DNA of 64,000 bases from Macrostomum lignano (taxonomy: Eukaryota). Numbering within the stretch: the first letter of the stretch is position 1; every line of letters starts with the position of its first letter. The translations under genes were made by a program, and so were the position numbers. The stretch spans positions 1 through 64,000 of the forward strand of contig NIVC01000785.1 of assembly GCA_002269645.1 (NCBI GenBank), given 5' to 3'. Under the pieces are notes generated by a model. It worked only from the letters and a program-made list of their open reading frames with translations, was not told the origin of the DNA and searched no databases. Positions 1,871-64,000 of this stretch are shown here, one piece after another.

Positions 1871-2263
1871 CGAGGTAAAATCCACCTGGGCGAACCAGCA
1901 TCGGATTCTGTCCAAAAGCCCAACAACATTAATGATACTCGTCGCAGTGAACTGAAATTTTCTAACTTTCTGTGCCAGAAAAACTTTTATTCTCTTGTTT
2001 GTTTTCTCCTAAGTCGCGAAATCGGCAAGATTAGTCATCTCTGTTGCATTTTTTACCGTCTTGTTTAAATGCGCATTTCCCGCGGCCTTTACAGCGGTCT
2101 CTTTAACACGATGAAAATATTCTGGCCAAGAAATTTAGCTCGTTAATTTTTTAAGTTCGAAATTTTCCAATTGGACGCCGCAAGGTTGCTGATGAAGGTT
2201 ACAATAGTTGGCTTATTCAGCATCCTCGGCCTCACCTTCAGTGGAATTGTGAAGCTATGCAAA

Positions 2264-2786
<523 letters not shown>

Positions 2787-3252
2787 CTCTGTTAGCTGCG
2801 CTAAAGCTCCCCCCCCTAGAAGAGCCGGTTGCGCAATCAGCTTTGGCAGAAAAAAGCACATTAAGTGAGGAGCCATGTTTCTGTTTAAAAAAAGTCCTGT
2901 GGCCCAACGGCAGCAGCCATAGAAGATCTGAGGTCCCAACTCAAGTGGCTCGCTAGCCTCTCGGAGCTGCTGCATGCGATTCTGTATCAATTTTTCCCTT
3001 CCCCACTTCCATTTTGTCGCTCAATATTTCGCTGAAGTTGCCGAGAATAAAAGCCGCACCAGCCGATCGATGCTGGTGCGAAAGAAATCGAAGCAAAAAA
3101 ACGCGATTGCGTAATCATCGCCGGATGCCGGTGGGCCAGGGTGGGGGAATGATGGCGGCTTAGGAATCCAGAGATGTGCCAGTGGATTTAAGCTCGAGCA
3201 CTGAATACCGGTTTGAACGCTTCCGTCTGCCTGCCAGTCTTCTTAAGCCCAA

Positions 3253-8300: not shown

Positions 8301-10476
8301 CTCGCAGCCGCCGCAGCCTCCACCGGCGCGACCAGTTTTCCCCAATACGCCTCCTCTGGTGAAGTCGCCGCCGAAGCGAGCTGGTGGCGGTAAGTTTGAC
8401 TCTACATGGTGCACTGCAATTCACATTTAGCATGGACACCGTTGACGTGTTTACAATTGAAAGAAAATTATTTGTTCCTCCATTCAAGGCCACGCCATTG
8501 CTGATGGAAACCGCAAAGTCGGAGACGAAGGAGACAGTGAAAAAATAGTCGTGTCAGTCAAGGAAATTCTACCTGTCGTGATCTCCCTGGCCGTCCTCTT
8601 ACTCGTTGCCATCGTTCTAACCATAGTCTTCTGCGTTTATCGACGCTCAGCCAAGGCAGCCGCCGCTGCCGACGCGGCAGCAGCCGCAGCCGCCGACGAT
8701 CCGTGCGGGCTGGCCAGCGGCAAGGCAATGCGGCTGGCGGCCACCAAGAAGTCCGTCTCGGACGTCAGACTGGATCTGCAGTGCACAACGCCGTTGCTCA
8801 CGGCGCAGGAGTTTCCCATTACTCAGATTCGGTGAGAAAAGCTTGACCGAAAACCCAGACTCATTTTAATGATGATAATTGATTAAACCTGCCTTAATGG
8901 CCAGATGTGCAACCGACAGCTCAATCGTAGCTATTGCGCGGCGCACCTGAAAGCTGCGTACGGCTGTTCAGTCCAAGGACTGGGGGGGGGGTCGCCACAC
9001 AGCCTCAATTACCCACCCATTTTACAGCTGGGTGAACTGAAGCAATACAGAGTTAAGTGTCTTGCTCAAGGAGAATCGAACCCCGACATTTCAGCGCCAG
9101 TCCGACTCTCTAACCACTGGGCTACAATCCCAGTTGTAGGATTTTTATTGAAGACTCAATTTGACCCTTATAGTGCTTGCTACGAACTAAATGCCATGGA
9201 AACATCCTGTAAGCTTGCCGTACAAGCCAATGTAGAACGTAGACGTCTCGTCTCGGGAAGTACATGCAGCGAGAATCTCAGAGCTCTAGGAACCAAAATT
9301 CTATTGCATCCAAATCCCAATGCAGATTTAATTATTCCAAAACTTCTCTCCCACTTTCAGATTCGGAGAACTTCTCGGCGAGTCAGCGTTCGGTCGCGTC
9401 TACAAAGGTGAACTGATAGGCGTCTACAGCGAGACGTCTCTGACACCGGTGGCCATCAAGTGCTTGAACGGCAGTGCAGATGCGGCCCTAAAGGAGGAAT
9501 TCTCCCAGGAGCTTCAGCAGCTGGCCGGCCTGTCCCATCCCAATCTGACCGACTTCTGGGTGTGTCGCTGCGCCAGAGCCCCTGCTGCCTGGCCATGGAG
9601 CTGCCTCCGCACGGCGACCTTCACGAGTTCCTGGCCTACAGAAGTCCTCGAAGCGAACACAGCGGCGACTATCACGATCCCCTGAGCCAGGCACAGATGT
9701 TCCACATGGCCACTCAGGTGGCCTCCGCTGTGGAATACCTGACCCTGAGGTGCCTCGTCCATCGGGACATCGCGGCAAGAAATATTCAGCTGGGCGACAA
9801 GCTGGAGTGCAAACTGAGCGACCTGGGCCAGTGCCGCGACATCTACGCGCCTGACTACTACCTGCTACGGCCGGGCAGCCGCCTGCCCATCCGCTGGATG
9901 CCGCCCGAGGCCACGCTCTACGGCCAGTTCTCAACCCACAGCGATGCCTACAGCTTCGGGGTGCTGCTGTGGGAGATCTGGTCCTACGGCCTGCAGCCCT
10001 ACTACGGCTATTCGAATAGTGACGTCATTGAGCTGGTGCGCAAGCGCCAGCTATTGGCCTGCCCGCCGGACTGCCCACCCAGGCTGTACAGCCTCATGCT
10101 AGAGTGCTGGACCCAGCCGATGGTACATCGAGTGTCGGCCACTGAGATCTGCAATCGATTGAGACAGCTTCAAGCGGAGGTTCTGGTCGAACTGTCGACT
10201 TCATCTCAGGGCTCGTCGGGCAACACCAACTCGACTGCGTTCAGCGGCGAACGGCCGATGGGGCAGCTGGCTCAGCCGGCCTCTCAGCGAGTCATTCCGG
10301 TGCCAGTGCCGCAGTTGAGTCCCCCAGGGTCCAGCGCGGGATCCGCGGGCTCGATAACGGCGTACAGCAGCGGCGGCGGAAGCAGCTCAATGGTGCAGAG
10401 CTACCAGCTGCACGGACCGCCTCAGAGGCAGCCACTGGGACTGCGGCAGAACTTCCACTCCACCATGGCTGTCTGA
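5347..10476 (+). CDS. ror: ROR-family receptor tyrosine kinase (signal peptide - Ig - Frizzled CRD - kringle - TM - kinase - Ser/Pro-rich tail); two apparent 1-bp deletions
   Basis: Exons with GT-AG ends: 5347-5459 (signal peptide MACRSQSTLMLLAAFSHLLLARTAEA), 6282-6511 and 6784-7100 (Ig: YCDIVGTPVPNYQWYKDG...DSGSYRC), 7578-7829 (CRD), 7907-8389 (kringle CYNASDATGYRG...PWCF...WEDC), 8489-8831 (TM), 9361-10476 (kinase GESAFGRVYKG, VAIK, HRDIAARN, SDLG..RDIY..DYY, LPIRWMPPEA, YGLQPYYGYSN, RKRQLLACPPDCPPRLYSLMLECW). Phases are consistent apart from slips at ~6297-6302 and ~9549. Confidence 0.95.
5548..5856 (-). mobile_element. tRNA-derived SINE with CORE-like central domain, copy 1 (ROR intron 1)
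   Basis: Minus strand: GGGGTTTTAGCCTAGTGG (A box) ... GGTTCGATTCCCGGCCC (B box), then TGTGTCCTTGAGCAAG..ACACTTAACTC...CAGCTGTAAAATGGG, ending in an ATT-rich tail; homologous to 8867-9131 and 12235-12560. Confidence 0.9.
8867..9131 (-). mobile_element. Same SINE family, copy 2 (ROR intron, small internal deletion)
   Basis: Shares GCAACCGACAGCTCA..CTATTGCGCGGCGCA.CTGAA.GCTGCGTACGGCTGTTCAG, CCCATTTTACAGCTGGGTGAACTGAAGC and the GAATCGAACCCC B box with copy 1. Confidence 0.9.
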
Positions 10477-13541: not shown

Positions 13542-13647
13542 TCTGCAAGCGCAGAACTAATAGAAATTATCAGAAGTACAGCACTCGTACAATGAACTAA
13601 TGAACTAATAATAATATTTTAAGATACACCTGTTGAATAATTTCGCC

Positions 13648-14201
13648 TACACATCCTATACATCCTATACATCCTGCACATCCTACACATCCTGCACATC
13701 CTACACATCCTGCACATCCTGCACATCCTACACATCCTACACATCCTGCACATCCTACACATCCTACACATCCTACACATCCTACACATCCTGCACATCC
13801 TACACATCCTGCACATCCTACACATCCTACACATCCTGCACATCCTACACATCCTGCACATCCTACACATTCTTACACATCCTGCACATCCTACACATCC
13901 TACACATCCTGCACATCCTACACATCCTGCACATCCTACACATCCTGCACATCCTACACATCCTACACATCCTGCACATCCTACACATCCTGCACATCCT
14001 ACACATTCTTACACATCCTGCACATCCTACACATCCTACACATCCTGCACATCCTACACATCCTGCACATCCTACACATCCTGCACATCCTGCACATCCT
14101 ACACATCCTACACATCCTGCACATCCTACACATCCTGCACATCCTACACATCCTTCACATCCTACACATCCTACACATCCTGCACATCCTACACATCCTA
14201 C
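13648..14201. repeat. 9-bp tandem (ACATCCTAC/ACATCCTGC)
   Basis: Direct inspection. Confidence 0.97.
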
Positions 14202-14370
14202 TTTCGTTAATAACTAATCTGTTCTAAATATGATCAGCTTTATATTATATTAGAACAGCCATAAGATATACGGTTCTTTTATCATAAACTTGAAAAAGGA
14301 AAAAAATTGATGTCACCTGTATATTTGAAACTGTATATTTGAAATCGGTTAACAAAAACTGGTGTCAAAG

Positions 14371-18936: not shown

Positions 18937-21054
18937 TAGCTTTTTCAGCTAATTTGGGCTTACGCACATTGAATTTAATCTAAGATAGGTTTGCCGATGT
19001 AACGGAGCTTTTGTCTATGGTAGCAAGGCTGGCACAGCGGCATTTCATTTGGTCCAAAAAGCATCAATTTGTTCATAGCTTCATTTGCAATTGTTGCGGA
19101 GGAGCAAGATCAGCCCCAGAATACTGGACCATATGCTAGGCTGTTGAAAGAATGCCATTGGCTTGTGAAGCACTCGACAGAGGTGAACACCCAAAGGACA
19201 TTGCAAGGTTGCTGAATGTAAAAGATAAGATGGTTTGGAGCATCCATCAGCGCGTTAAAACTCTGCCGGCAGAGATTGCCTGCGAAAGGGTGGCAATCGC
19301 CAAAGCAAGTAGCTCGAGAGCCTCTTGACTTACTTACTGACTTAACTGCCGAGCAGTCCGAAGACGCAGCGGGGAGGCGAGCGCCGCCCATTCCGCCAAA
19401 CCCTGGTGACCCGCTTCAGCAAAGGTGCGGGGCCAGTCAGGGCGGTCCGCCAGTACGTCCTGCAGAGTTATCTTCGATGGGGAAGAAAGAGGCTCGTCTA
19501 GTTGCCCGAAGGAACCGGACGAGCCGTGAGATGTTCTCGGGTCTGCAAACGTCATCGATGGATGGGTTTGGACCGAGGTGGTTTAGCCGCTCCCTAGTGA
19601 AGAACGGGCATTGACAGACGAAATGCTGAGCATCTTCATCGTTGTACTCGCAAAAGAGGCTCAGTTCATTCCGGATGTCGCCCCGGAGGCAGCAGTGCCT
19701 AGCGAAGCAGCCATGAACCTTGAGGGTCATAGCAAGAGCTCGGATGTCCTTCCTGCTTCGGTTCACGTGATTGTCGGCAGGTGGTGAGGTTCATCCATCT
19801 GTCCCTGTGCAGGGCGGAGGCCCAGGCACCAATGCTGCGATTGATGATGGCCGCAGGGATCGGAGCCAAGGGCAGAGGTCCCTGGAGGGAGCCGCCACTT
19901 CCTTGTTTTGCAAGCGAGTCGGTCAGCTCGTTTCCAGGGAAGCCAGCGTGACCTGGGATCCATTTGACCTGGACGCATTTTCGCGTCCCAGTGTATTGAG
20001 CATCCGGGCGCAGTCGGAGACCGTCCGGGAGGCCGTAGTGGGGTGACAGAGGGCTAGCAGAGCAGTCTGACTGTCGGAGTGAAAAACTATCTATAGTTTT
20101 TCCGGAGGTGTTTTTGCTGCATAGCTCTGCAGCGCAGGAGCTAATAGCAAGGACCTCGTTCTGGAAGACAGTAGAAAGTCTTCCAGTGTGCTGGGCATGC
20201 GTGGCGAGCCCGCGGCCATTGGTGAGAATGCAGACCCCAAAGCCGGAGAGGCCGTCTTTTAGGGATCCGTCTGTGTAACAGTGGACCTCCTGGGGATTCC
20301 AGTGGTCGTTTGCCTCCTCTCGGGGAGGAAGACTGACCTTGAATCGAAGACAAAGGTTGAGCGTGCGAGGTTCCCCGTCCGAGAGGACGTTGAGGCCGCC
20401 GCTCTCCTGAAAATCTTTGAGACAAAGGTCGGAGTGAGGCAGATGCTTGCGCTTAGCCATTGCCCTCTGGGGCTTGAGAGTGATGCCGGTGTCGATGAGA
20501 CGCCGGGCAGCTTTTGCTGCCTCACTGCGGACGAAAATGTCCAGCGGAGGCAGGTCAAGGAAAGCGTTGAGGCCGTCGAAGGGAGCAGAGGACGGGGCGC
20601 TCATGAGCACGCCCCTGCACTCGTTTAAGAGCTTCGAAACAGGTCTCAATCTGCAGGGCACTGGCCCAGGCTCGAGAGCCTTAGGTCCAACTGCTACTTG
20701 ATGCAGTTGAGAAGAACACTTTGTTTACGTTGCAGAAAATGCAGCAGAAGTTGAAGGAACAGTTCCAGTTGGCTATCAGATTTTGATTATCAGCGGAGCT
20801 CTGGAAAAGCGACTGAAAATTGTTGGTAGAGACGCTGACATTCCAGTGGTCCGCAACCATCGCAGACGGTTGCGAGAAGGCAATAGTTTGTCCAATGGCT
20901 CACGAGCGTTCGGACCAAATTGATGCTTGTTGGACCAAATGAAATGCCGCTGTGCCAGCCAATTGCTACCATAGACAAAAGCTCCGTTACATCTGCAAAC
21001 GTATCTTGGATTAACTTCAATCCCAAATAAGCCCAAATGGGGTGCAAAAAGCTA
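18937..21054 (+). mobile_element. Non-autonomous IS630/Tc1-mariner-like DNA transposon with ~138-bp TIRs and TA flanks, interrupted by a LINE fragment
   Basis: 18937-19074 is the reverse complement of 20913-21054 (e.g. GATGTAACGGAGCTTTTGTCTATGGTAGCAA / TTGCTACCATAGACAAAAGCTCCGTTACATC); ends read TA|TAGC...GCTA|TA; internal HTH-like remnants EALDRGEHPKDIARLLNVKDKMVWSIHQR (~19168-19255) and LDAVEKNTLFTLQKMQQKLKEQFQLAI (~20697-20778); no DDE domain visible. Confidence 0.8.
19324..20669 (-). mobile_element. 5'-truncated non-LTR retrotransposon (RNase H plus C-terminal CCHC; R1/LOA/I-like) with a perfect 12-bp TSD
   Basis: Minus-strand connection motif APFDGLNAFLDLPPLDIFV, RNase H CYTDGS...FQNEVLAI...WIPGHAGFPGNELTDSLAKQG (frameshifted), C-terminal HGCFARH...FC...ED.QHFVCQCP; 3' tail AGTCAGTAAGTAAGTCAAG; GCTCGAGAGCCT duplicated at 19312-19323 and 20670-20681; RT absent. 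Confidence 0.92.
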
Positions 21055-23204: not shown

Positions 23205-26009
23205 TTGTGTACTGTAGCATTACATTATTCCAGAAACTATGCGGGTTTATGAAATAAATTATTTTTTGTTCCTTCTAGTCACCTCAACAAAGTAATTGTC
23301 AACTATTCTGTTCAGAAGGTTAAATTTGCAGCATTTACAAACTAATGACAGTGGATTGCTCAAACATCAGGCCAGCTAGGATCTGTATTAAAGCCATTCA
23401 ATAAGCCAAATCCTCCAGAAACCATTCGATAGTCTTCTTCAATAAATTTTAGAAAAAAGTCATCTTAAAGACAATTCAATTCTTTAAATCCGATCAACAG
23501 AGTATCTTAATGATTAATGCATGATTAAACGTTCGTACTACTCTCAATAGTACGCTTAACTTAAACCTTAAGTTTTCGGAGGAAATTGAAAGAGATTTCA
23601 AAAAAGATTCTTACCGAGTGCGGTTCGTAGCTTTGAGAATAAAATCCGTTAACCTTCTCGCTATTGAAGTGATTGTACTGTGCACTGGAGTATTGTAAGC
23701 TTCCCATCTTAAAAGCAACTGTAAAAATACATCATAAATCACCAGAATTTCCGTGGAATAAACTAACTCCAAAGTACCGCTGCGAGCTAAAATACGCATT
23801 ATAAAAATGAAGTTGTAGATGTGGTTCAGCTGTCCACAGATTTAGGTACTCTATAAGTAGACAAAAACTCTTTTCTAAACCAGCTAATCAAAAATCATAC
23901 TAACCAAAATGCTAGTCTTCATGTTGGAAATACACACACACAGAGAGTAAGCAATTGCTCTAATTCTACTGCGTGAATTTTCAAATGAATCATTGATCAA
24001 CGCCTTACAACGTTTCAGGTTGAGTCGGGATCTCAAAGAGTTGTCCGCCATTAGTCAAATTAGCTGAAAAGATACATCAAAATCAATTTGGGCCTCCACG
24101 TTGGCTCTTTTAAGCGTCCAGCAAAACCCTTTCTAGAAAATTTTTCTTTGATTTAAAATCGTCTGTTCTTCTAGCTCGTAAAGCACTAATCCGCCAACAC
24201 AAGGATTTAAGTCGACCTCGAGTTTTTCGACACATGACTTAATTACGTTACACACAGGGACACACATTTAAAGCTATTTTTTAGGTTTTGTCAGGAATTC
24301 CTCGGTGTTCCTCGCCACACGGGTTCACTGGCTACACTCTAAATAGTCACAAACACATCAAGCCCAGGACCCCCAAAACTCTCCGGACCAGCCCTACCCC
24401 ACGCCAGCCAATTACCACGCCGGAGGAGATAGAAAAGACTGAGTAAGCTGCCTGGCCCAGCCAATCAGATTTCACCAGGTCTCAGAGCCATAACCCAAGT
24501 CGAAAACAATATGCGTAATACGTAAAGGCCCAGAAAATTGGGGAATGGAAAGGCAGGCACACTGAGTCATGCAGGGAAGCAAACGAAGAAAGAGTTGTCT
24601 GCCCTTGTACTGCAAAAAAGTGCAGAACACAACAAATCGCTCAATTTATCAATTATGTTCGGCATGGCACCCGGAGAAAGAGGGAAAGCAATAAAAATTA
24701 TACTCTGTTCTGAGCTGATCAATCTCGTGTCTGACAGCATAGAATAGAAAATTAAGGTTGGGATAATTTTTCATGACATTTGTTGCTCTGGATCTCGTTC
24801 TCGTTCAAGGGCGTTCTCAAATGCTTGAGAGAGGGCTTTAACAAGGAAAGATGCTTCTGTGCAAGCCCAGTATGTAAAAGCCGAGTCTCTAGGACTCTAC
24901 ATGTAGGTACAATTGTATATTTGACTTTAGCCTAACTTTAGACGTAAGTATAAAAACTTATCGCGTCGTAATCCATCGATGTATATCTCAATGTACAAAA
25001 GTACGAACGAACATATTTGTCAGCGACGCCGATAGACGGATATTGGTGTGTCAGTCGGGTGAATTTTTCTGTTTTTTAGCCATCACATTTAGCCATCTCG
25101 AGCGTTACATATACTGTAAATTTTTGTAATTGATGTGTAAGTAAAATTTGAGTATATACTCAGCAACATTGAAAAGTCGCCACCATTTGCCCCAGTAGGC
25201 AGTGTCTTTTGACCAGCGTCTATCACCTGGCCAACCATTTTGATAATAAAAAATGCTTGAAAAAACAATGAAAACCGGGCGGAAGCTTCAATCCAATCTT
25301 CGCCCTCCGCTCTTCCCAATCCCTCCTCACCCAGCCCAATTGAATGATGCAACGGAGTTGCGTCACTCAAAAGTCAATACTGAGCTAGAATCTACAGCGC
25401 ACTCTCAAAGGTGCCGACTTTTTAATGTTGTTGAGTATATTTTAATAGTTCTGCCGTCAATCTGATTTTAGTTTGAGCTATCGATACAGTTGTTATTTGA
25501 AAAAATCTTCTTTCATCAAATTTACCAGACTGAAAACCGTCCAATATTAAACAGTGGAGATTAGTTCATTTTTCTCTGTTTCTTTTATTTGTATGCATTT
25601 TCTGTCAGCTACTTCTGTTCCGCTGCCTCTTAGCAAAACAATGCTTTCTGGTACCTCACAAAGTCATGGACGATTGCTAGAAGGGCTTCTACTTCAGCTG
25701 AGAAAATATTTCATCACTATTTCTAGGGATTCTATCGCGTGACAATTTTAACGAAACAAATGAATTCCGAACTGAAGTTGGTAGATTGCGTTGAATACTT
25801 TGAGAGGCTTCCGTTGTAATTGATTCTGACACTGTATTCATAAATAGCTCGTAAAGACGGAACGCAACCGGCAACTTTTATTTGCAAGAACAAAAAAGTG
25901 TCGATTAAAGTTAAAATTTATTGCAACGGATTTTCAGATTGAAAGCGGGCATCAAAGTATCTGTTGGGGGAGGCCGAAGTTCGTAAACTTTTTTTTCTGC
26001 AGAATTCCG

Positions 26010-26243
26010 TCATCCAAACCGCGGTCGGCTCATGGAGTTCAGGTAGCGGCGCAGGCTCGACAGGTACCGAGCAGCTTCAGCAGCGGATCGAAACTCGCCA
26101 TTGGAGCCGAGGCTTCGCTTGCCGAATTGCGGTCTCGGCACCGAGTGAACGTGGCGATCCAGGTAAGCCAGGTACTTGGCAACTTCCTCAATCGAGCCAA
26201 GGCTCTGCAGCCTCGGGGACGGCGGTTGCGGCGACCGTTTCAC
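26010..26243 (-). CDS. npf: NPF/NPY-family neuropeptide precursor exon encoding two tandem peptides (...RPQF-GKR and ...RPRF-G-stop); signal-peptide exon not located
   Basis: KR|SPQPPSPRLQSLGSIEEVAKYLAYLDRHVHSVPRPQF|GKR|SLGSNGEFRSAAEAARYLSSLRRYLNSMSRPRF|G*. Peptide 2 has Tyr 10 and 17 residues from the C-terminus plus RPRF-Gly, the NPY/F signature. An in-frame TGA lies 7 codons upstream of the V of VKR, so a 1-bp indel or an unseen splice is needed. Confidence 0.85.
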   Translation of the reverse strand: MKRSPQPPSPRLQSLGSIEEVAKYLAYLDRHVHSVPRPQFGKRSLGSNGEFRSAAEAARYLSSLRRYLNSMSRPRFG

Positions 26244-27607
26244 CGGGAAGAGTCCCGCCGATCATTTTCGATGCTTATTTAAAAGCGACTGTTTATCTTT
26301 AAAGAAAAAATATTTCGTCAAGCTCGATGTGGCGAGAAGAAAAGTGACGTCAATCGCATGCTGAGGTACCATATTAAGCTTTTGCCTTCACCTCACGCCA
26401 TCCATAGCAGCTTTTCTTGGTTTGATTGGACTGTGACTCAGTGGGCCAATGGACGGATTTGAGTAAATTTACGAAGCCTGTCTTACCGGATTGAGCAGAA
26501 ACTTCTCCTTGATTCGTTTTAGCTTATGTCATCAACGCTTTTGTTTTGTGCAGGAATATGTCATTGTCGACTGATTAAACAGGCAGTAATTCCTCATTCT
26601 TTCACCTTAGATAACTAAGAATGTACTGTCACTCGAGTTTCTAAACTCAAAACAACCATCTGTGATCCCTAAATGCATGAATTTGGCTCCTGTACATGTA
26701 CTTCTCACTTAAGCACACGTATTGCTTAAGCAGCCGAATGGGAAAGGATAACTGTGACGTTTTTCATGTCTCTCTCATATCGATGCGCCGCTTTGCTCAT
26801 TCTATTTGCAATCGATATTTTAGGAGAGAGGCGGTAGGCAAACACCGGCGGCTGTCTCTCGCGGTATCAGGCTGCCCGACGCAGCCCACTGGCAGGATTT
26901 GTCAACAGCTCCGGGGGGGCCGGTGAGTGATGACACGCCAGCCATCCCGGTGTTTTCTCACGACTTCCGTTCCTTCAATCTTGCGTTCTGAATTTCAGTA
27001 AAAAGTACATGCAAAGCTATTTGTTATTTTTTTACATTTCCGCTTTCGAGAGCTGCTAGCCTTGAAGAAGTTGTCTCAGAAATCCAAACCTGTGTATACA
27101 AAATTGGGTCTTCGCTTCCATCTGTATCCGCTTCAGTGAGTTTCAGAAACGATTTTCGTAGGCGTAGCACGCAGCCAATGCGTCTGCTACACGGATGAAG
27201 AGAAATGATATTCTTGCAATACAATTCCTGCGTAAGAGTTTTGAAAGACTCTCGACTGATGGACCACCAGTTCGATCTACAATATTCGAGGAGAATTAGA
27301 AAACTCACTACTATCATTTATTTAGCGTGTGGTTAAATACGAGTACATCAATATTAATATACGGATATTAGCAACATTAATATACGGAAGCTTGTAAATT
27401 AGTGGCTAGCGTGGTGCATGCATGTCATAAGAAACAACTATTAAAAGAATGTCCCAGTGTCATTGGTTTCTGTTAATGGTCACTTACAAAAGTGAATATT
27501 GTTTCAGGTATGTCAGGTAAGTTTCAGGAAATTCTAAAAGGCACGTCTGGAATTAATTTGTATGATGTATAGCCCGCTGGTAGAACCGGCTCTTCGAAGT
27601 CTCCTTT

Positions 27608-30600
27608 CTAAACAAAGTCTGATCTTTGCTTATTGTTGAAACATTCGCAGGCTCCAGCCGTCGCGATCGTAGCAGCTCCAGCGTCCAGGGCCGTATCGCT
27701 GAAAGGAATTTCCTGCTGCAGATGCTGCTGCTCCTGTTGAGTTACTGCTGGCTCCTCATTGGATGAAGCGGCTCGTCGATTCGACAGACGGCTCTGCCAA
27801 TGCACCGCCAGCTTGATGAGCAGTTCCAGGACCTCGACAAGCCACACCAAGGTCAGGCCGATCCACATGGACAGCAGGCCACCGATCTGACTAAGCGTGG
27901 AGGCCAGAGTGCGCACCGGTTTGTCAACAATCTGCAGCACCGTGAAGTCTTTGCGACTGATGCGCAGCGTCAGGAGACTGCGGGACACCAGCTTGTTGCT
28001 GATCACCAGCTTGGCGGCTTCGGTCTGAGCAAAGCAATCGGGCGGATGGTGAAATAGAAGTCTTTGTGGCTGTGACAGTGCTAATTTGCTGATAACTCAC
28101 AGTTAGTTGCTTTAAAGGGAAGCTTCCTTGTACTTCAAAAGAGAAAAAAATAGTCTCAACAATAAACACCTACAATTTTCTAATTGCCCAAGGTTGTTTC
28201 TACCTTTGAAAGCGTAAAGTAATGAGCAAGCAGAGCAAAAAAGTTATTTCAGCAAGTCAAAAGGCAAAGACGCTGAGACGAAGACAAAAGAGGCTCGATG
28301 GAGACACAGACATCTTTTCAGCTAAATGAAGACTATTTTAGGTAATACCTACAGATGATTTCCATTTTGAGCATTTTGAGTACAACAGGTATATCCATAT
28401 AGACACCGAAAACAGAAGTGACTACTCTTGAGTAGTGAATCACGGAAATGATAGAAAAATTTTGATTTTAATTTTTGTACTTTTATGAATTACGAACGAA
28501 CTTGTAGCCATAGGGAGGCGGGGTGGCGCATACACATTGCGGCCCACTTACTTCACAAAACGTATCTAAGCTTGTACTCACTCTGCTAGAACCTTTAGCC
28601 CGGACAACATCCTCGTACATCTGCTTCACTGTCGCGTATGCTTGCCTGGCTGGATTGTTGAGAATTGAGTGGTTTCGAGATCGATTCGGATCTTCAAACT
28701 CGTACTCGGGGCCGTGTTGCAGCAGCGGCAGCAGCTCGCTCTCGAACAAGTGCAGCTGCATGGAGTCTCGCGGCCACAGGGCCTGAGTAGTGGACACCTC
28801 GTAGGTGAGGTAGTTGCACGGCAGAGGGCAATGATAGTCCACCTGTTGGTCAAGCGGTTACAGAAGAACAAAGTATTTTCTGAGCTAAGAAAATCGATCA
28901 GGCCTAAAGCACTGTGTATAAAATGTCCAACGTCAAAAGATCTTAAGGACCTAGGACTGAGGACCTGAGGACCTAAATTGTAAATCAAAACTACTCTAAT
29001 TGACCCATGAAGGTGCTCTCCCGTCCGCTTGCGCTTTGGAGGCACAGCACCAATGTCACTGGAAAGGTTCACTAAAAATATTCACTAATCTCCCATAAAG
29101 ACCCGAATTCATGGGAGATTAGTGATTTACAAAAGTGATTTAAAATTTCAAAAGTGATTTACATCTCGAAATGAACCCAAAAGGCCGCAGCGGGTTCGCT
29201 TTGTTGTCTGCACCAACCCCCGGAGGCTGAATGAGTTGAAATCGCCGTCTAGTCGTTCGCACATGGCAGACGCATTGCCCTTGGAGTAGAGCATTGAGGC
29301 CAGCGTGCAGCCGCACTCTCGCTCGATGTACTCCTGGTGATGCAGGCGCTTGCAGGCGTCGATGGAGTAGGCAAAATTGCGGCCGAAGATGTGCAGATGC
29401 GGTGGCACTCTGTGATGGCACTCTCCGTAGGGCCTCGGCAGTCGAGTCCAGTTGACGCTGGTGAAGCGAACCTCGGTCAGCGTGCCGGGGTACACGTTGA
29501 AGCCAAGCTTTGTAACATCCGGGAAGCTGCCTTGCTCATGCAATACTACCCTGGCGCCCATGATCTGCGTGTTCGGATCGATGGTCATGCAGTCATCGCA
29601 GCCGATGCTGAGCTCGTGGCCCAGGTAAAGCAGCATCTCCATCTCGATGACAGGATAACTGGTATTCACGCTGAAAGTGTAGCAATTGAGCCGGCTCTGA
29701 TCGTGCACTTGACGCCAGCTGCCAACTGCCTGACAGCGAGGACTGCTCATGGGCAGCTCACTGGAGCCGTCTCTATATTTTTCAGCATCTGGGCGCAAAA
29801 CAGTAAGAAAACAGCTGCGAACCTGCGTTGGAAGTTTAAAAAAATTGTGAAAGTTACGTTAGATATCTGGGCAAGATAATTAAGTCACTGTTGACGTTTA
29901 CAAGTTGCCAACAGTTACGAAAGTTAGGCAACTTTAGGCAACGAAAGTTAGTTAGGAATTTATTTTCATATCACTTCTCGATAAGACAGACCTAAAGTTC
30001 ACACTCATCAGTTTCGGGTTTATCAGGTTCGAGCGTTTATAACCATCCAGTAATTGCATCCGGTATTGATTTTAATGGGTTTGAAATATTGAAACTGACC
30101 AGCTGATTCAGGGTGAAGCCTAAATCTGACGGCTCGTGCCCGGCCGGTATGTTGGAGAAGTAGCTGTTCAGCGAGAAGAAACCGGCCATGTAGGGACTCA
30201 GCTGCTTCCAGTCTTCCCGGCTGATGTTCTTCAGCCTGCTTAGCTGTTTGGCCGCCTGCTTCACTGCGGCCCAATAGTCTCGAGGAGCTCGCCAGCCGTG
30301 CCGGTAGATGGTCTCGCGGCCTTGCAAAGACAGAGGCACCTGGTTGCACACCGTGATCGATGGGAACTGAGCGTCCAAGCGATGCACGTGGCTTGGCATC
30401 TGGACGACATCGAAAGCCAAGTAGAGGTTGATGATCTGCTGCAGGTTGATGGCGCAGCCGATCATCAGGGCGGCCACGAACACCAGCCAGAGGATCTGGT
30501 AGCGCTGGCTGTCTGCACTGACAATGCGAGGTATGCCGCGCAAACTGGTGTTGCGGCAGAAGCGCAGCAGGATTTCTCTGGCGCGCTCGCTCTGTCCCAC

Positions 30601-30744
30601 TCGGGAGTTTTGATCTGCCTGCATCTCGGCGCGCTTCACCGATCGCGTTTGATGGTCGGTGCAGTCGGACTTCGTGCGAGGACCCGGGAGGATTTTTAGA
30701 TACGACCAGTTTTCAACAACTCTCCCATCAGAGATCTTTCTCAT
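27608..30744 (-). CDS. DEG/ENaC (amiloride-sensitive-type) sodium channel subunit, ~660 aa
   Basis: Four exons, all phase 0, GT-AG: 30744-30100, 29822-29163, 28842-28582, 28024-27608. Motifs: FCRNTSLRGIPRI, TM1 LWLVFVAALMIGCAINL, FPSITVCN, NCYTF, GARVVLHEQGSFP, GFNVYPG, YSIDACKRLH...ECGC, CPLPC..LTY, TM2 TLSQIGGLLSMWIGLTLVWLVEVLE. Confidence 0.94.
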
Positions 30745-31731: not shown

Positions 31732-35159
<3,428 letters not shown>

Positions 35160-36591: not shown

Positions 36592-36785
36592 AACAAAAAC
36601 GATTGGATCTCACTACTCACTGAGTACTTAGTTTAAGTAGTATTAGAAAGTAGGGCAAGAATTAAAATAACTTGCAGCAGATGTAGAATCAAGGACCACT
36701 AGAAGTTACTAGAAGACCTACGAGCGTAGTGATCCTTGTGTAGAATATTTCGAACTTTATGTCTTGCTTATTAAGAACATTTTTT

Positions 36786-37926
36786 GCTTCAGAGTAAATA
36801 GAGCCAGTATCCTCACCTGTTACAGTCGGTCTCCTCACTCCCTGTTACAGCCAGTATCCTCACCTGTTACAGTCGGTCTCCTCACTCCCTGTTACAGCCA
36901 GTATCCTCACCTGTTACAGTCGGTCTCCTCACTCCCTGTTACAGCCAGTATCCTCACCTGTTACAGTCTGTCTCCTCACCCTGTTACAGTCGGTCTCCTC
37001 ACCCTGTTACAGTCGATCTCCTCACCCTGTTACATACGGTCTCCTCACCTGTTACAGCCGGTCTCCTCACCTGTTACAGCCAGCAGTATCCTCACCTGTT
37101 ACATACGGTCTCCTCGCCTGTTACGTCCGGTCTCCTCACCTGTTACATACGGTCTCCTCACCTGTTACGTCCGGTCTCCTCACCTGTTACATCCGGTCTC
37201 CTCACCAGTTACAGCCAGCAGTATACTCACCTGTTACACCCGGCCTCCTCACCCTGTTACACCCGGTCTCCTCACCCTGTTACAGTCGGTCTCCTCATCC
37301 TGTTACAGTCGGTCTCCTCACCCTGTTACAGTCGGTCTCCTCACCCTGTTACAGTCGATCTCCTCACTCTGTTACAGTCGGTCTCCTCACCCTGTTACAC
37401 CCGGTCTCCTCACCCTGTTACAGTCGGTCTCCTCACCCTGTTACACCCGGTCTCCTCACCCTGTTACACCCGGTCTCCTCACCCTGTTACAGTCGGTCTC
37501 CTCATCCTGTTACAGTCGGTCTCCTCACCCTGTTACAGTCGGTCTCCTCACTCTGTTACAGTCGGTCTCCTCACCCTGTTACAGTCGGTCTCCTCACCCT
37601 GTTACAGTCGGTCTCCTCACCCTGTTACAGTCGGTCTCCTCACCCTGTTACAGTCGGTCTCCTCACTCTGTTACAGTCGGTCTCCTCACCCTGTTACACC
37701 CGGTCTTCTCACCCTGTTACAGTCGGTCTCCTCACCCTGTTACAGTCAGTCTCCTCACCCTGTTACAGTCGGTCTCCTCACCCTGTTACAGTCGGTCTCC
37801 TCACCCTGTTACAGTCGATCTCCTCACCCTGTTACAGTCGGTCTCCTCACCCTGTTACACCCGGTCTTCTCACCCTGTTACAGTCGGTCTCCTCACCCTG
37901 TTACACCCGTCCTCCTCACCCTGTTA
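36786..37926. repeat. 23-bp minisatellite (CCCTGTTACAGTCGGTCTCCTCA), ~1.1 kb
   Basis: Direct inspection; variant units at the left end. Confidence 0.97.
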
Positions 37927-38349
37927 CATTCAGAGTATAAGTTGCAAGCTTTCCCTCGATAAAGCGAGCATTGTCAACATCCTAGAGAGCTTATCCCCTA
38001 AGATACATGTAGAATGCATGCAATTAGTAATCAGATACGTGAGACCAAAACGCAGTTAATAAGCATTCGTTGATGAATCAACAGTAATAAACCTATACGC
38101 TAATTGGCCGATTTTGACAACAATCTGCCATTAGCCTATTATTGATGATCTGCACATCTATAAATATTTTATTGGGTCTAATTGCGGACCAAGACTCATT
38201 AGAATCGACGAAACTGAGCAGTTTGAGCTGTTAAAATTATGAGTCGTTTGTGCCAGAAAGATTCAGGAGTGCTTAGAGCATCTGAGCTGCTCGTCTGGTC
38301 AAATTAATTTGAGTCTTGTACACGAAAATTGGTGGGAGGGTTGTCCTGC

Positions 38350-38906: not shown

Positions 38907-39289
38907 CTGTCGGAGTAAAATCTCAGTGTCAAACTGCTGACGACTGTGATAGCTGCTTTAGTGTCGTGAGAAAAGGTTTGAATGAAGTGCCGCCCCCCCC
39001 CCCTCCCTATTGTTCGCGGCAAGATGGCTATACGAGCTTTTTTATGTACTTACTTTTACGGGACTCGCTAAAACTCAGGAGCGAGCGACCACTTTGGCCT
39101 TTGCTGTCTCAGCGTTGAAAAAAGAAGAATTTGAACTACTTCGTAGCTCAAAGACAAAAGTTTCATGAGCCTTAAAATTGCTCGATGCAAGGAGTGGCTG
39201 CTGCAAGTTAAATCTTAAAAAACAATTTCAATGCATCACGTTATGAAAGGAAGGAGAGAGTTGAGAGAGGGAGTGGCAGGAGACGAGGA

Positions 39290-40035
39290 GAGAGGTGAGA
39301 GAGGGAGGTGAGAGAGGGAGGTGAGAGAGGGAGGTGAGAGAGGGAGGTGAGAGAGGGAGGTGAGAGAGGGAGGTGAGAGAGGGAGGTGAGAGAGGGAGGT
39401 GAGAGAGGGAGGTGAGAGAGGGAGGTGAGAGAGGGAGGTGAGAGAGGGAGGTGAGAGAGGGAGGTGAGAGAGGGAGGTGAGAGAGGGAGGAGAGAGAGGG
39501 AGGTGAGAGAGGGAGGTGAGTGAAAGAGGGAGGTGAGAGAGGGAGGTGAGTGAGAGAGGGAGGTGAGAGAGGGAGGTGAGAGAGGGAGGTGAGAGAGGGA
39601 GGTGAGAGAGGGAGGTGAGAGAGGGAGGTGAGAGAGGGAGGTGAGAGAGGGCGGTGAGAGAGGGCGGTGAGTGAGGGAGATAAGAGAGGGAGGTGAGAGA
39701 GGGAGGTGAGAGAGGGAGGTGAGTGAGAGAGGGAGGTGAGAGAGGGAGGTGAGAGAGGGAGGTGAGAGAGGGAGGTGAGAGAGGGAGGTGAGAGAGGGAG
39801 GTGAGAGAGGGAGGTGAGAGAGAGACGTGAGAGAGGGAGGTGAGAGAGGGAGGTGAGAGAGGGAGGTGAGAGAGGGAGGTGAGAGAGGGAGGTGAGAGAG
39901 GGAGGTGAGAGAGAGACGTGAGAGAGGGAGGTGAGAGAGGGAGGTGAGAGAGAGACGTGAGAGAGAGACGTGAGAGAGGGAGGTGAGAGAGAGAGGTGAG
40001 AGAGAGAGGTGAGAGAGGGAGGTGAGAGAGGGAGA
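39290..40035. repeat. 13-bp purine-rich tandem (GAGAGGGAGGTGA)
   Basis: Direct inspection. Confidence 0.97.
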
Positions 40036-40811
40036 GGGAGAGGCAGGAGAGGAGAAGAGAGTGGTAGAAAGGAGAAAGATGAGAAAAGGTTGCAGGGCTG
40101 GAGTCTGTGCCTGAGCCGCATACCGCAGTTAAGAATAATGCCGAGCACTTTAGGCGGAGTAAAAAACACTCCAAGCAGTCCCGTCCAGAAGGGGTGAGGG
40201 CAGAAGAGGGCAGAGTTGGGAAAACGCAGAGAGAAAGCTCAAGCTGTTTGCTTTTAGGCTGCTTAACAATGTGAGCAATTTTCGAATGGCCGACAGCGGA
40301 GAATGCTAAAGCAAACTATTCCTTAAAAATTGGCCTCCAAAAATAGAAGAGAGGCCAGCGTTGGCCTTGTTTGGACAGCAGGCATGCAAGTGGGGGTGTG
40401 TAGATTTCTCTGAGCATTGAAGCGTTGGACAGACTTGGCGATCTAATTTGAGGCTCTGAGATTTGCGGCCTTACTAAGCAATTATTCAATGTATTGGACT
40501 ATGCGGCAAAGGAAGGCGGCCCTTTCCTCTCAACGTGCCCTGATCTGAATTTGCAGGGTTAGATACGCCTGCAGGCTTCAGTGGGCCATAGACTATGCTG
40601 TTCGGTTCAGTGCGAATTTGGAATGCAAGACTGGGTGACTCATGCCCCTGCACCGAGCCAGTCATACTAATTAATATTGTTACTTCCTTAAATACTTAAT
40701 AGCGCTACCAGTACTCAATGCAAAACTGCCGCTAAAAAACTAATGGCATCCAATTACACATGGCTCGTGACGTGAAATGACTATGATTTTGTCTTAGTGT
40801 CTTAGTGTCTT

Positions 40812-41578
<767 letters not shown>

Positions 41579-42017
41579 TTATGCTCTCTCCACGTTCGGT
41601 ACTCACTATATGAGCCATGGCCGATCCTGATCCTGAAACTTACAAGTTTTTGAGTCGCCTGGACTCCTAAAACAAGAAGCGACAGTGTACCTGATATTCC
41701 GTACTCAAGCATGGACTGAGTTTCTCGATCCCAGCAGTCAACATATGGCTGACTCGATTTGGCTTATTGGCAGTCACGCGCTCGAGTACTTTCTTGAGCT
41801 TTTGGCCTTCCTTCCAGCCCGATCGATTCTGTCTCTCCACTTGGCGACTTAACGTCGAGCCTCTCTGTATCTGCGTTAGAACTGTGCTCTGTATAGATTC
41901 TACCAAAATCGATAATTTCGACACTCGCCGCTTTTTTGTCCTGCTGAGTCCGGTCTTTAAGAGGGCAAACGTATTTCCCAAAATCATGATACGTGCTGCT
42001 ATACATTCTTTTAGCTG

Positions 42018-42274
<257 letters not shown>

Positions 42275-43095
42275 ATTACATTCTTATATCATTAAAACTT
42301 TGAGCGATTCATATTTTCAACTATAACCTCAGTCGTAGAGTCAATTCTCCCCTACTGAGCAGCATATGACGCTCGCTATTCCAGTAATCCAAAGGTCCCA
42401 TAGAAAAATCCCCACCGTAACGGCCATAGCCATAGCGGCAACTCTGGACCGGACTTGAACTCTTCCCACCCAGGGAAAATTGTCAAGCAGGAAGTGAAGC
42501 AGCCCGCACAAAAACTAGGGGAAGTCTTTTGGTAGCGTCAGGGAGAGGGAAAGAGGGGGAGCAAAGTGGACGGCAAGGCTGCGTCACCATGGAAACCAAT
42601 GCCAACAGTTTCCTAACCCTTCAGCTCAGCTCTCAGTTTCGGGCGAGACAACCCTCCACACCGCCCACTCGTGCACACCACAATGGCATTGCTGCGTAGG
42701 GCAACGCTGGTTGGTGAAAAGACTTGGGGAGAGAGACAGACAGACGTGCGGCAGGGTTATTGGCCTAAGCATATAGTGATGCCCCCAGCCAAGTATAAGA
42801 ACGGTGAGTGAGACCCAACTGCAGTAGAATTCTCAAGGGATCCGAAGACACGGCAACGTTGGTGCGCCCACTACTAGTACACGTCTCTCTCTCTCTCTCC
42901 ATCATTACTAGCTCTTTCCCCATCGCTGCTCCACAATAGTATTTGAGCACACCCCGACTGACTCAGCATAATACACCCTAGAGAATACGCCCTGAAGAGA
43001 ATTTAACAGCTTCATCAAACAAGAGACTGAGAAAGCGGAAATTTTAACATCTGTATCTTTTGTTGTCGAGTAAAATAAATCAGAAAAAGCAAAAC

Positions 43096-62930: not shown

Positions 62931-63105
62931 CTGGGGAGTAAAATGGGAAGAATGGAGAGGGGATTTTACTGAGCTGAAAAGAAACATGACGGATAAATGA
63001 TAAATACTGAGAGCTGACAATGCCCCTAACACTATACATTTAACCGTAGTGACGACAATTAGTAATGACGCAATGGGATGAGTGCCAGAATAATATTAAT
63101 GGATG

Positions 63106-63660: not shown

Positions 63661-64000
63661 ATGAGGATGGAAAAACAAAAAACGGAGATGAGAAAATAAA
63701 AGATAGGATGAAGAAACAGAAGAAAAAGATGTTTGGAAGACAAGCATGTAAAACATCTCTAAGAAATATACTACCACAGTCAGAGTGAAAGGCATGCACT
63801 GAGCATGCTGGATACTGGTGCGGAGTTTTACATCAGTTTGTGCAAGTGTCTTCTAATAAGAATTCAAAAAAACAAATATTATTGCATGTGCAGATTGAAA
63901 AGATAGCAAAAAACGAAGATAAACAGCCAGTCCCTGTGTTTTAGGCAAGTGACAACATGCCAAATAGCAATAATTTGTTACCTGAATTACTTTTAATGAA

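What the first reader, a model, noticed from the sequence alone, without database searches (positions are those of the whole stretch)
26010..26243. NPF/NPY precursor encoding TWO tandem amidated NPF-like peptides
Seen: KR-[37 aa SPQPPSPR...KYLAYLDRHVHSVPRPQF]-GKR-[33 aa SLGSNGEF...RYLSSLRRYLNSMSRPRF]-G-stop. Established: NPY/NPF prohormones characteristically yield a single mature peptide followed by a C-terminal extension, usually with an intron inside the final Arg codon. Here the extension is itself a complete NPF. Peptide 2 is canonical (Tyr at -10 and -17, RPRFamide). Peptide 1 keeps the PP-fold prolines and Tyr-17 but ends in atypical RPQFamide, losing the penultimate Arg important for receptor binding. 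Inference: intragenic duplication producing co-released peptides with different receptor selectivity, or an agonist/modulator pair. This is the best candidate here for an undescribed signalling system.
Basis: partly seen in the sequence, partly recalled or inferred. Interest (0 to 1): 0.85.

Follow-up and report, generated by a model that had tools for sequence, protein, structure and literature searches.

The report
Broken copy of two-peptide NPF gene
The window holds a real flatworm (Macrostomum lignano) neuropeptide-F gene that encodes two hormone-like peptides in a row. This copy has lost its secretion signal to a 62-base deletion, while an intact twin elsewhere in the genome belongs to a small, apparently undescribed family of multi-peptide NPF genes.

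Summary
On the minus strand, 26243..26010 reads VKR-[37 aa ...RPQF]-GKR-[33 aa ...RPRF]-G-stop and matches Pfam Hormone_3 above its cut-off.

The window is Macrostomum lignano contig NIVC01000785.1. The in-frame stop just upstream is genuine. It does not point to a missing upstream exon. Compared with a 97-98% identical, syntenic duplicate on NIVC01000376.1, the window copy carries a 62-bp frameshifting deletion just after ATG-ATC-GGC. That deletion removes the signal peptide, so this copy is most likely a dead duplicate.

The duplicate (PAA84402.1, 105 aa) is intact. It has one exon: signal peptide, short spacer, KR, then both peptides.

The two-peptide layout is a family trait. Two adjacent M. 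lignano genes encode two to three tandem ...SRPRF-GKR units, also without the classic Arg-codon intron. Unit 1 resembles their unit 1 most closely and unit 2 their unit 2, so the internal duplication is older than the gene duplications.

Unit 2 is a canonical NPF. Unit 1 (RPQF, His in place of Tyr-10) fails the Pfam cut-off on its own and probably binds classical NPF receptors poorly.

Similar multi-NPF precursors turned up in krill and in unnamed marine eukaryotes, and C. elegans FLP-34 is a published precedent. This is a new variant of a known kind and of moderate interest.

The parts
26345..26352 (.). Perfect palindromic CRE-like site TGACGTCA, 80 bp upstream of the ATG. It is conserved at the matching place in the intact duplicate.
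   Evidence: 4 sites in the window against 0.82 expected by chance. L001 position 9914, 87 bp before its ATG. A regulatory role is inferred only.
26263..26265 (-). Original start codon (ATG) of the prepropeptide. In the window copy it now opens a 25-codon out-of-frame ORF (MIGGTLPGETVAATAVPEAAEPWLD-stop).
   Evidence: Alignment to L001; reading.
26251..26252 (-). Junction of a 62-bp deletion relative to the intact duplicate. The lost sequence is ATCAGTTCGG...GGCTCGTCTC, which encodes TSVRFAVICSFCLILTASGSS. The deletion removes the signal peptide and shifts the frame.
   Evidence: exactly 62 bases, not a multiple of 3, with no GT..AG ends.
26262..26264 (-). TGA in the NPF reading frame. It is a by-product of the frameshift: these bases are the TG of the ATG and the A of the next codon, ATC.
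26235..26252 (-). Remnant of the short spacer (L-F-P-V) and the first dibasic cleavage site, Lys-Arg (26240-26235).
26124..26234 (-). NPF-like unit 1, 37 aa, SPQPPSPRLQSLGSIEEVAKYLAYLDRHVHSVPRPQF. It is divergent: RPQF ending and His at position 10.
   Evidence: Alone it scores 15.1 bits against PF00159, below the cut-off. Its closest relatives are the first units of the paralogues.
26115..26123 (-). Gly-Lys-Arg: the amidation donor plus a dibasic cleavage site between the two units.
26016..26114 (-). NPF unit 2, 33 aa, SLGSNGEFRSAAEAARYLSSLRRYLNSMSRPRF. It is canonical: RPRF ending, Tyr at 10 and 17. Its Asn5 (AAT, 26102-26100) is Ser in the intact copy.
   Evidence: Alone it scores 38.8 bits against PF00159, above the cut-off.
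26010..26015 (-). C-terminal Gly (amidation donor) followed directly by the TGA stop. There is no C-flanking peptide.
25917..25922 (-). AATAAA polyadenylation-type hexamer, starting 88 bases after the last base of the stop codon. It is conserved in the duplicate.
   Evidence: Its use is inferred only.

Best explanation
Window positions 26265-26010 (minus strand) are a disabled duplicate of the Macrostomum lignano gene Mlig025228, a single-exon NPF/NPY-family prepropeptide gene.

In its intact form (NIVC01000376.1, PAA84402.1, 105 aa) the gene encodes:
- a signal peptide (MIGRTSVRFAVICSFCLILTASGS);
- a short spacer ending in Lys-Arg;
- a divergent 37-residue NPF-like unit ending RPQF-Gly-Lys-Arg;
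- a canonical 33-residue NPF ending RPRF-Gly-stop.

Inferred mechanism for the intact gene: the precursor enters the secretory pathway, a prohormone convertase cuts at the two Lys-Arg sites, a carboxypeptidase trims the basic residues, and the amidating enzyme converts each C-terminal Gly to an amide. Two amidated peptides are then packed and released together. Unit 2 would be the agonist of an NPF/NPY-type G-protein-coupled receptor. Unit 1 has lost the penultimate Arg and Tyr-10, so it would be at best a weak ligand there. It is either decaying or has shifted its target.

In the window copy, a 62-bp deletion right after codon 4 removes the signal peptide and shifts the frame. No secreted precursor can be made, so this copy is a pseudogene or null duplicate within one of the large duplicated blocks of the DV1 genome.

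The tandem layout is ancestral to a small M. lignano family of intronless multi-NPF genes. It was not created in this gene.
For: Shown by tools:
- Species and locus. Exact cluster mate PAA84402.1 is BOX15_Mlig025228g1 from M. lignano. The window is NIVC01000785.1 of GCA_002269645.1, in the record's own coordinates.
- Intact copy. L001 10001-10318 is an uninterrupted 105-codon ORF with an N-terminal hydrophobic signal.
- Deletion. A 62-bp deletion and frameshift sit in otherwise 97-98% identical, syntenic DNA, with a Pyr_redox gene on one side and an NTE/patatin gene on the other.
- Family membership. Hormone_3 scores 47-47.5 bits against a cut-off of 28.7. Unit 2 alone scores 38.8 and unit 1 alone 15.1.
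- Internal homology. Score 57 against 16.5 +/- 3.4 for shuffles.
- Paralogues. Mlig009822 has 3 units and Mlig007142/003006 has 2-3 units. Both are contiguous ORFs lying 7.6 kb apart on one contig.
- Unit-by-unit similarity. Unit 1 is closest to the paralogues' first units (13 of 24 identities). Unit 2 is closest to the second unit of Mlig009822 (16 of 24), then to the unit-2/3-type units (14 of 24). The krill units group with each other.
- Structure. AlphaFold places helices at residues 6-21, 46-59 and 82-99, but confidence is low (mean pLDDT 52).

From papers:
- The GenBank annotation of this assembly is transcript-based, and 180 Mb of the assembly lies in duplicated blocks at least 95% identical (PMC5730564).
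- M. lignano has a prohormone convertase 2 (pc2) homologue (PMC4490696).
- Replacing Arg35 of NPY with Ala costs 1000- to 75000-fold in receptor affinity (PMC3563083).
- Planarian npy genes carry one NPY-like peptide plus a C-flanking peptide, and ten of the eleven have an intron in the Arg codon (PMC2953531).
Against: - I could not inspect sequencing reads, so the deletion could be an assembly error. However, long-read errors are normally 1-3 bases, not 62.
- The window locus still carries a GenBank CDS (74 aa, partial). Some transcript was therefore placed there, possibly by multi-mapping from the intact copy.
- The coding part after the deletion is no more diverged than its flanks: 2 differences in 242 bases, against about 6 expected (P about 0.05). 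There is thus no sign of long-term decay.
- No peptide, expression-site or receptor data exist for either unit.
- Unit 2 contains an internal Arg-Arg (SLRRYL) that could be cut to give a 10-residue peptide instead.
Confidence: 0.75

Rival explanations
1. The 62-bp gap is an assembly or polishing artefact or a rare somatic or haplotype variant. On this reading the window locus is a second fully functional copy of the two-peptide NPF gene.
For: The rest of the gene is almost untouched: 2 differences in 242 bases, with the CRE-like site, AATAAA and all cleavage sites intact. The assembly is known to be difficult and redundant (PMC5730564). A CDS is annotated at the locus.
Against: A clean 62-bp loss with a neighbouring substitution (AGG to GGG) is not the usual long-read error type. 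The annotated CDS is 5'-truncated (74 aa, starting at Ser1 of unit 1). That is what an ORF caller would produce on a frameshifted transcript model.
Confidence: 0.15
2. The signal peptide lies on an upstream exon, or the transcript is trans-spliced, so the window ORF is expressed as it stands.
For: Many M. lignano mRNAs are trans-spliced (PMC5730564). NPY-family genes elsewhere have several exons (PMC2953531).
Against: There is no AG acceptor and no ATG in the NPF frame between the in-frame TGA (26264-26262) and the Lys-Arg codons. The intact duplicate shows the gene has a single exon, with its ATG at the position matching 26265.
Confidence: 0.03
3. In the intact gene only unit 2 is a hormone. 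Unit 1 is a decaying repeat that now serves merely as a pro-region or spacer and has no signalling role of its own.
For: Unit 1 has lost three family hallmarks that the first units of the paralogues keep: Arg to Gln at the penultimate position, Tyr10 to His, and Ser to Pro before RP. It falls below the Pfam cut-off, and restoring Arg in silico lifts it only to 21.8 bits. Arg35 is essential in vertebrate NPY (PMC3563083).
Against: Its Gly-Lys-Arg processing and amidation signal, its helix-forming core and its reading frame are all preserved in both duplicates. RPQF is present in both, so it predates their split. A second paralogue unit also varies at this position (RPHF in P0011), hinting at tolerated or used variation.
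Confidence: 0.45
4. The gene belongs to the short-NPF / LFRFamide-type multi-copy RFamide families rather than to NPF/NPY proper.
For: Several copies per precursor is typical of sNPF precursors (PMC3749230).
Against: The units are 29-38 residues long, end in RPRF, and carry Tyr at 10 and 17. They hit the NPY/PP Pfam model above its cut-off. Profile hits are to annotated NPF/NPY precursors of molluscs, arthropods, rotifers and planarians.
Confidence: 0.05

Closest known systems
Flatworm NPF / planarian npy genes (Moniezia expansa NPF, Schistosoma npp-20, Schmidtea npy-1 to npy-11)
   Same: Same phylum. Peptides of 29-39 residues with an amphipathic helix, RPRF-amide ending, Tyr at positions 10 and 17, a Gly amidation donor, dibasic processing, and a match to Pfam PF00159.
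   Different: Those precursors carry one NPF-like peptide followed by a C-flanking peptide, and ten of the eleven Schmidtea genes have an intron inside the Arg codon (PMC2953531). Here there are two units (two to three in the paralogues), no C-flanking peptide and no intron, and unit 1 ends RPQF.
C. elegans FLP-34 (NPFP-1) precursor
   Same: One gene yields two NPY-like RxRF/Y-amide peptides with different C-termini. Their potencies at the NPF-receptor orthologue NPR-11 differ: 19 nM against 0.7 nM (PMC6751662).
   Different: I recall the nematode peptides as shorter; I did not check their sequences. Both keep the RxR motif. No sequence-level orthology to the M. lignano units was tested, so independent origin is likely.
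M. lignano paralogues Mlig009822 (PAA66726.1) and Mlig007142/Mlig003006 (PAA66725.1, PAA75755.1)
   Same: Same species and same intronless multi-unit layout. Identity to the intact precursor is 43-46% in the alignment, with position-for-position unit correspondence. UniProt auto-names them Neuropeptide F or Y.
   Different: They have two to three units, nearly all ending SRPRF-GKR. The exception is one RPHF in the third unit of P0011. A short C-terminal tail follows the last unit. The two genes sit next to each other on a different contig set.
Krill NPF2-type precursors (Meganyctiphanes norvegica CAL4093327.1 and relatives)
   Same: Three tandem units of about 31 residues ending ...AGRPRF-GKR in a 143-residue precursor. 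They were found by the same searches.
   Different: Arthropod origin. The units resemble each other more than any M. lignano unit, so the duplication was independent. The gene spans about 48 kb, so it has introns.
Arthropod short NPF precursors
   Same: Several amidated RFamide peptides are cut from one precursor.
   Different: sNPF peptides are usually far shorter (8-10 residues in insects; PMC6389622), end in RLRF-amide, and act on a different receptor family.

Membership tests
NPF/NPY (Pfam PF00159, pancreatic hormone peptide) | Match to the family profile above the curated cut-off | tested here: met
   Window ORF 47.5 bits and intact precursor 47.0 bits against a cut-off of 28.7. Unit 2 alone scores 38.8. 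Unit 1 alone scores only 15.1, below the cut-off.
NPF/NPY (Pfam PF00159, pancreatic hormone peptide) | C-terminal R-x-R-F/Y followed by a Gly amidation donor and a basic site or stop | tested here: met
   Unit 2 reads RPRF-G-stop. Unit 1 does not meet the feature: RPQF-G-K-R, with the penultimate Arg replaced by Gln in both genomic copies.
NPF/NPY (Pfam PF00159, pancreatic hormone peptide) | Invertebrate NPF hallmark: Tyr at positions 10 and 17 from the C-terminus | tested here: met
   Unit 2 has Tyr at 10 and 17. Unit 1 has Tyr at 17 and 14 but His at 10 (direct reading).
NPF/NPY (Pfam PF00159, pancreatic hormone peptide) | N-terminal signal peptide on the precursor | tested here: not met
   The window copy has lost it to the 62-bp deletion. 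It is present in the intact duplicate P0002: two Arg residues in the first eight, then the hydrophobic run FAVICSFCLILTA, which is modelled as a helix at residues 6-21.
NPF/NPY (Pfam PF00159, pancreatic hormone peptide) | Precursor layout: one peptide directly after the signal peptide, then a C-flanking peptide | tested here: not met
   The layout is a spacer, then two tandem units, with Gly-stop after the second. The paralogues have two to three units.
NPF/NPY (Pfam PF00159, pancreatic hormone peptide) | Conserved intron inside the codon of the penultimate Arg | tested here: not met
   Genomic ORFs are uninterrupted in L001 10001-10318, the window, L003 1930-2421 and L003 10001-10426. The feature is typical but not universal: ten of the eleven Schmidtea genes show it (PMC2953531).
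NPF/NPY (Pfam PF00159, pancreatic hormone peptide) | PP-fold: a polyproline N-terminus packed on a C-terminal helix | tested here: inconclusive
   Unit 1 has Pro at positions 2, 4, 5 and 7. Unit 2 has none. AlphaFold predicts the two helices but with mean pLDDT 52.
NPF/NPY (Pfam PF00159, pancreatic hormone peptide) | Activates an NPF/NPY-type G-protein-coupled receptor | not testable with these tools
   Needs synthetic amidated peptides and cloned M. lignano receptors.
Short NPF / LFRFamide | Short peptides (8-10 residues in insects) ending in (L/M)R(L/F)RF-amide, several per precursor | tested here: not met
   The units are 33 and 37 residues and end RPRF or RPQF. Only the multi-copy layout is shared (PMC3749230 and PMC6389622).

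The most novel reading that the evidence does not exclude
Tandem multi-NPF precursors are an overlooked, recurrent way of building NPF signalling, seen here in macrostomid flatworms, krill and other marine invertebrates. In Mlig025228, the RPQF-amide unit would be a genuinely processed peptide that has left the classical NPF receptor. It would then act on a different receptor or as a co-released modulator or antagonist, giving one gene two signalling outputs.
Probability: 0.15. Interest if true: 0.65.

Novelty: new variant of a known kind. Interest (0 to 1): 0.4.

Why it matters
Published descriptions hold that NPF/NPY precursors carry a single copy of the peptide. [quoted passage not shown]

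An early-branching (as I recall the phylogeny), genetically tractable flatworm has a family of intronless precursors with two to three tandem NPFs. One unit has a naturally altered receptor-binding end. This offers:
- a natural experiment on how NPY-family ligands diversify;
- candidate ligands for deorphanising flatworm NPF receptors;
- a reminder that the M. lignano DV1 assembly holds near-identical duplicates, one of which may be dead. That matters when designing knock-outs or RNAi.

For the scan itself, the main point is that the locus in this window is the broken copy.

Tried and rejected
- **Upstream signal-peptide exon or trans-splicing.** Rejected: there is no AG and no ATG in frame between the TGA and the Lys-Arg codons, and the intact duplicate has a single exon.
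- **The 62-bp segment as an intron.** Rejected: there are no GT..AG ends at any placement the 1-bp microhomology allows.
- **TGA read as a sense codon.** Rejected: the ORF also ends on TGA directly after the amidation Gly, and the duplicate explains the upstream TGA.
- **Word-indexed protein search with the window ORF.** It found only the window's own protein cluster. The exhaustive phmmer search was needed to find the paralogues. Two of its hits, P0003 and P0007, are repeat-rich proteins with no NPF features and were discarded.
- **Tandem Repeats Finder on the window gene.** No DNA-level repeat was found, so the two units are old duplicates. This contrasts with the 99-bp, 95% identical repeat in Mlig007142.
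- **AlphaFold model.** Too low in confidence (mean pLDDT 52) to judge a PP-fold, so no fold search was run.
- **Test for relaxed constraint in the window copy.** Not significant.
- **Literature.** No paper in the searchable library describes M. lignano NPF precursors or tandem NPFs in flatworms. McVeigh et al. 2009 (PMC2749192), the flatworm neuropeptide survey, and Fadda et al. 2020 (PMC7392509) could not be retrieved. Prior description in McVeigh 2009 cannot be ruled out.

Full report

Yes. The minus strand of 26243..26010 is an open frame. It reads V-K-R, then SPQPPSPRLQSLGSIEEVAKYLAYLDRHVHSVPRPQF, G-K-R, then SLGSNGEFRSAAEAARYLSSLRRYLNSMSRPRF, G, and stop.

It matches Pfam PF00159 (pancreatic hormone / NPY family) at 47.5 bits against a curated cut-off of 28.7. 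The two units are clearly homologous to each other: their local BLOSUM62 score is 57, against 16.5 +/- 3.4 for 5000 shuffles, none of which reached 57.

Counted from the C-terminal Phe, unit 2 has Tyr at 10 and 17 and ends RPRF. Unit 1 has Tyr at 17 and 14, His at 10, and ends RPQF.

**2. Where does the window come from?**

The encoded 74-residue protein clusters with PAA84402.1, 'hypothetical protein BOX15_Mlig025228g1' of the free-living flatworm Macrostomum lignano. The window is contig NIVC01000785.1 of assembly GCA_002269645.1 (Mlig_3_7), and window coordinates equal record coordinates.

The GenBank annotation of that assembly was derived from a genome-guided transcriptome with ORFs called by TransDecoder. 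The assembly also contains 180 Mb of duplicated blocks at least 95% identical, as the authors expected from the extra large chromosomes of the sequenced DV1 line (PMC5730564).

**3. What explains the upstream stop?**

PAA84402.1 (P0002, 105 aa) is encoded on a different contig, NIVC01000376.1 (locus L001), by one uninterrupted ORF at 10001-10318. Its sequence is MIGRTSVRFAVICSFCLILTASGSSLFPVKR, followed by unit 1, GKR, unit 2 and G.

The two loci are syntenic: a Pyr_redox flavoprotein gene lies on one side and an NTE/patatin gene on the other. They are 97-98% identical around the gene, falling to about 91-96% in some stretches on the NTE/patatin side.

The alignment shows that the window copy has the same ATG (26265-26263) but lacks exactly 62 bases right after ATGATCGGCGGGAC. 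The lost bases encode TSVRFAVICSFCLILTASGSS, the hydrophobic core and cleavage region of the signal peptide. Because 62 is not a multiple of three, the frame shifts.

From its own ATG the window copy now reads MIGGTLPGETVAATAVPEAAEPWLD-stop.

Between that TGA and the Lys-Arg codons there is no AG dinucleotide and no ATG in frame. Neither cis-splicing, trans-splicing nor an internal start can rescue a secreted product. The deleted segment has no GT..AG ends, so it is not an intron.

I conclude that the window locus is most likely a null duplicate (pseudogene) of an otherwise intact gene. I could not inspect reads, so an assembly artefact remains possible; I put it at about 15%. The surviving coding sequence differs at only 2 of 242 bases from the intact copy (one Asn/Ser change, one synonymous change). 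That is no worse than the flanks, so the lesion is probably recent.

**4. Is the two-peptide layout peculiar to this gene?**

No. An exhaustive phmmer search of 1.84 billion representative proteins with the intact precursor found two further M. lignano genes:
- Mlig009822 (137 aa when complete) has three tandem units, all ending SRPRF-GKR.
- Mlig007142/Mlig003006 (108 or 141 aa) has two or three units.

These two genes lie 7.6 kb apart on one contig, and each exists in three near-identical genomic copies. Both are contiguous ORFs in the genome.

At locus L003 the Mlig007142 sequence reads straight through three units. It contains a 99-bp tandem repeat at 95% identity. The annotated 108-residue product treats one repeat unit as an intron. 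Unit number in this family is therefore still changing, or is mis-annotated.

One copy of that gene ends its third unit in RPHF. This is a second case of change at the penultimate Arg.

**5. How old is the internal duplication?**

I compared the last 24 residues of every unit:
- Unit 1 of Mlig025228 is closest to the first units of the paralogues (13 of 24 identities, scores 74 and 68). Its own unit 2 is more distant (11 of 24, score 57).
- Unit 2 is closest to the second unit of Mlig009822 (16 of 24, score 84).

The tandem arrangement therefore predates the duplications that produced the three genes. No tandem repeat is detectable at the DNA level in the window gene, which fits an old duplication.

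**6. How does it compare with what is known?**

Planarian npy genes encode a single NPY-like peptide plus a C-flanking peptide, and ten of the eleven carry the intron in the Arg codon (PMC2953531). A krill neuropeptide survey states that NPF precursors carry a single copy 'as with all other organisms' (PMC3749230).

The M. lignano family breaks three of these conventions: it has several units, no C-flanking peptide and no intron. It keeps the sequence hallmarks of NPF.

A published precedent for two NPY-like peptides on one precursor is C. elegans FLP-34. Its two products differ in C-terminus and in potency at NPR-11, 19 nM against 0.7 nM (PMC6751662).

The profile search and a motif count turned up further unpublished-looking cases:
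- at least four krill (Meganyctiphanes norvegica) proteins with three ...AGRPRF-GKR units;
- several unnamed marine eukaryote proteins with three to four units;
- a metagenomic contig with two full-length NPFs in tandem.

The krill units resemble each other more than any flatworm unit, so the layout arose more than once.

I found no paper describing M. lignano NPF precursors. The main flatworm neuropeptide survey, McVeigh et al. 2009, could not be retrieved.

**7. How does it most likely work?**

Shown: the sequence features above.

Inferred from established prohormone biology:
- The intact precursor is translocated by its signal peptide.
- It is cut at the two Lys-Arg sites by a prohormone convertase. 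A pc2 homologue exists in M. lignano (PMC4490696).
- The basic residues are trimmed, and each exposed Gly is converted to a C-terminal amide.
- Both peptides are stored and released together.

Unit 2 passes the family model on its own (38.8 bits) and should be an agonist of an NPF/NPY-type receptor.

Unit 1 scores only 15.1 bits. Restoring Arg in silico raises it only to 21.8. In vertebrate NPY, replacing the equivalent Arg35 by Ala lowers affinity 1000- to 75000-fold (PMC3563083).

Unit 1 is therefore unlikely to be a classical agonist. It may be a decaying repeat that now acts as a pro-region (my estimate about 45%). It may instead be a peptide with reduced or shifted activity. Its intact Gly-Lys-Arg signal and its presence in both genomic copies keep the second option open.

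An internal Arg-Arg in unit 2 (SLRRYL) could also yield a short YLNSMSRPRF-amide. That is speculation.

The AlphaFold model shows helices at residues 46-59 and 82-99 but is of low confidence.

**8. Verdict**

The locus in this window is most likely a broken duplicate. The gene it copies is a genuine, transcript-annotated, two-unit NPF precursor and a member of a small multi-NPF family in M. lignano. The sequences are already in public databases, but as far as I could check they are not described in the literature.

This is a new variant of a known kind. It is of moderate interest to people working on neuropeptide evolution and flatworm neurobiology. It is not evidence for an undescribed signalling system.

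Noticed in passing
window 27608-30744, minus strand: A complete-looking DEG/ENaC (Pfam ASC, amiloride-sensitive sodium channel) gene in about four exons: 30744-30037, 29798-29148, 28842-28483 and 28006-27608. It ends about 1.3 kb upstream of the NPF start codon on the same strand. It is not among the called genes of either duplicate. Some channels of this family are gated by RFamide peptides, so the adjacency is curious, but it may be chance.
   Followed up: partly
window 26345-26352 (and L001 9914-9921): A perfect cAMP-response-element palindrome, TGACGTCA, lies 80 bp upstream of the NPF ATG and is conserved in the intact duplicate. The window has 4 such sites against 0.82 expected by chance.
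   Followed up: partly
L003 10001-10426 (NIVC01000624.1): The Mlig007142g2 locus reads through as a 141-residue precursor with three NPF units, and contains a 99-bp tandem repeat (2.4 copies, 95% identity). The deposited 108-residue protein skips one unit as if it were an intron. This is either copy-number polymorphism between transcript and genome or an annotation artefact.
   Followed up: yes
P0011 (PAA75755.1, M. lignano): The third NPF unit ends SRPHF-GKR instead of SRPRF-GKR. This is a second natural change at the penultimate Arg within the family.
   Followed up: no
P0006, P0012, P0013, P0014 (Meganyctiphanes norvegica, GCA_964058975.1): Northern krill has at least four proteins with three tandem NPF units of about 31 residues ending AGRPRF-GKR. 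The gene for P0006 spans about 48 kb. The published ice-krill survey had only a partial NPF2 and stated that NPF precursors hold a single copy.
   Followed up: partly
L004 3001-3609 (ENA ERZ25767047, contig of 334 kb); P0015-P0058 from the merc and jgi sources: An unidentified eukaryote in a metagenome encodes two full-length NPFs in tandem, each with a proline-rich N-terminus and ending RPRF-GR. Several unnamed marine eukaryote proteins carry three to four RPRF-GKR units. In some of these the units follow what looks like a canonical NPF.
   Followed up: no
window 54102-55574, minus strand: A 490-residue ORF with a weak rhodopsin-type receptor match (7tm_1, 20.6 bits, below the cut-off) and an NFFIY motif in the last helix. 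It may be a flatworm-specific orphan receptor.
   Followed up: no
window 19699-20661, minus strand: An ORF with an RNase H domain (36.6 bits), probably a retrotransposon fragment. This region is also where identity between the two duplicated blocks drops.
   Followed up: no
window 2143-2956, 13633-14217, 34196-35001, 36764-38059, 39228-40174, 40813-41712, 43015-43809, 46519-47568, 63040-63799: Very long simple-sequence and short-period tandem arrays give spurious ORFs of 150-430 codons in several frames. They fit the reported 15% simple and tandem repeat content of this genome.
   Followed up: no
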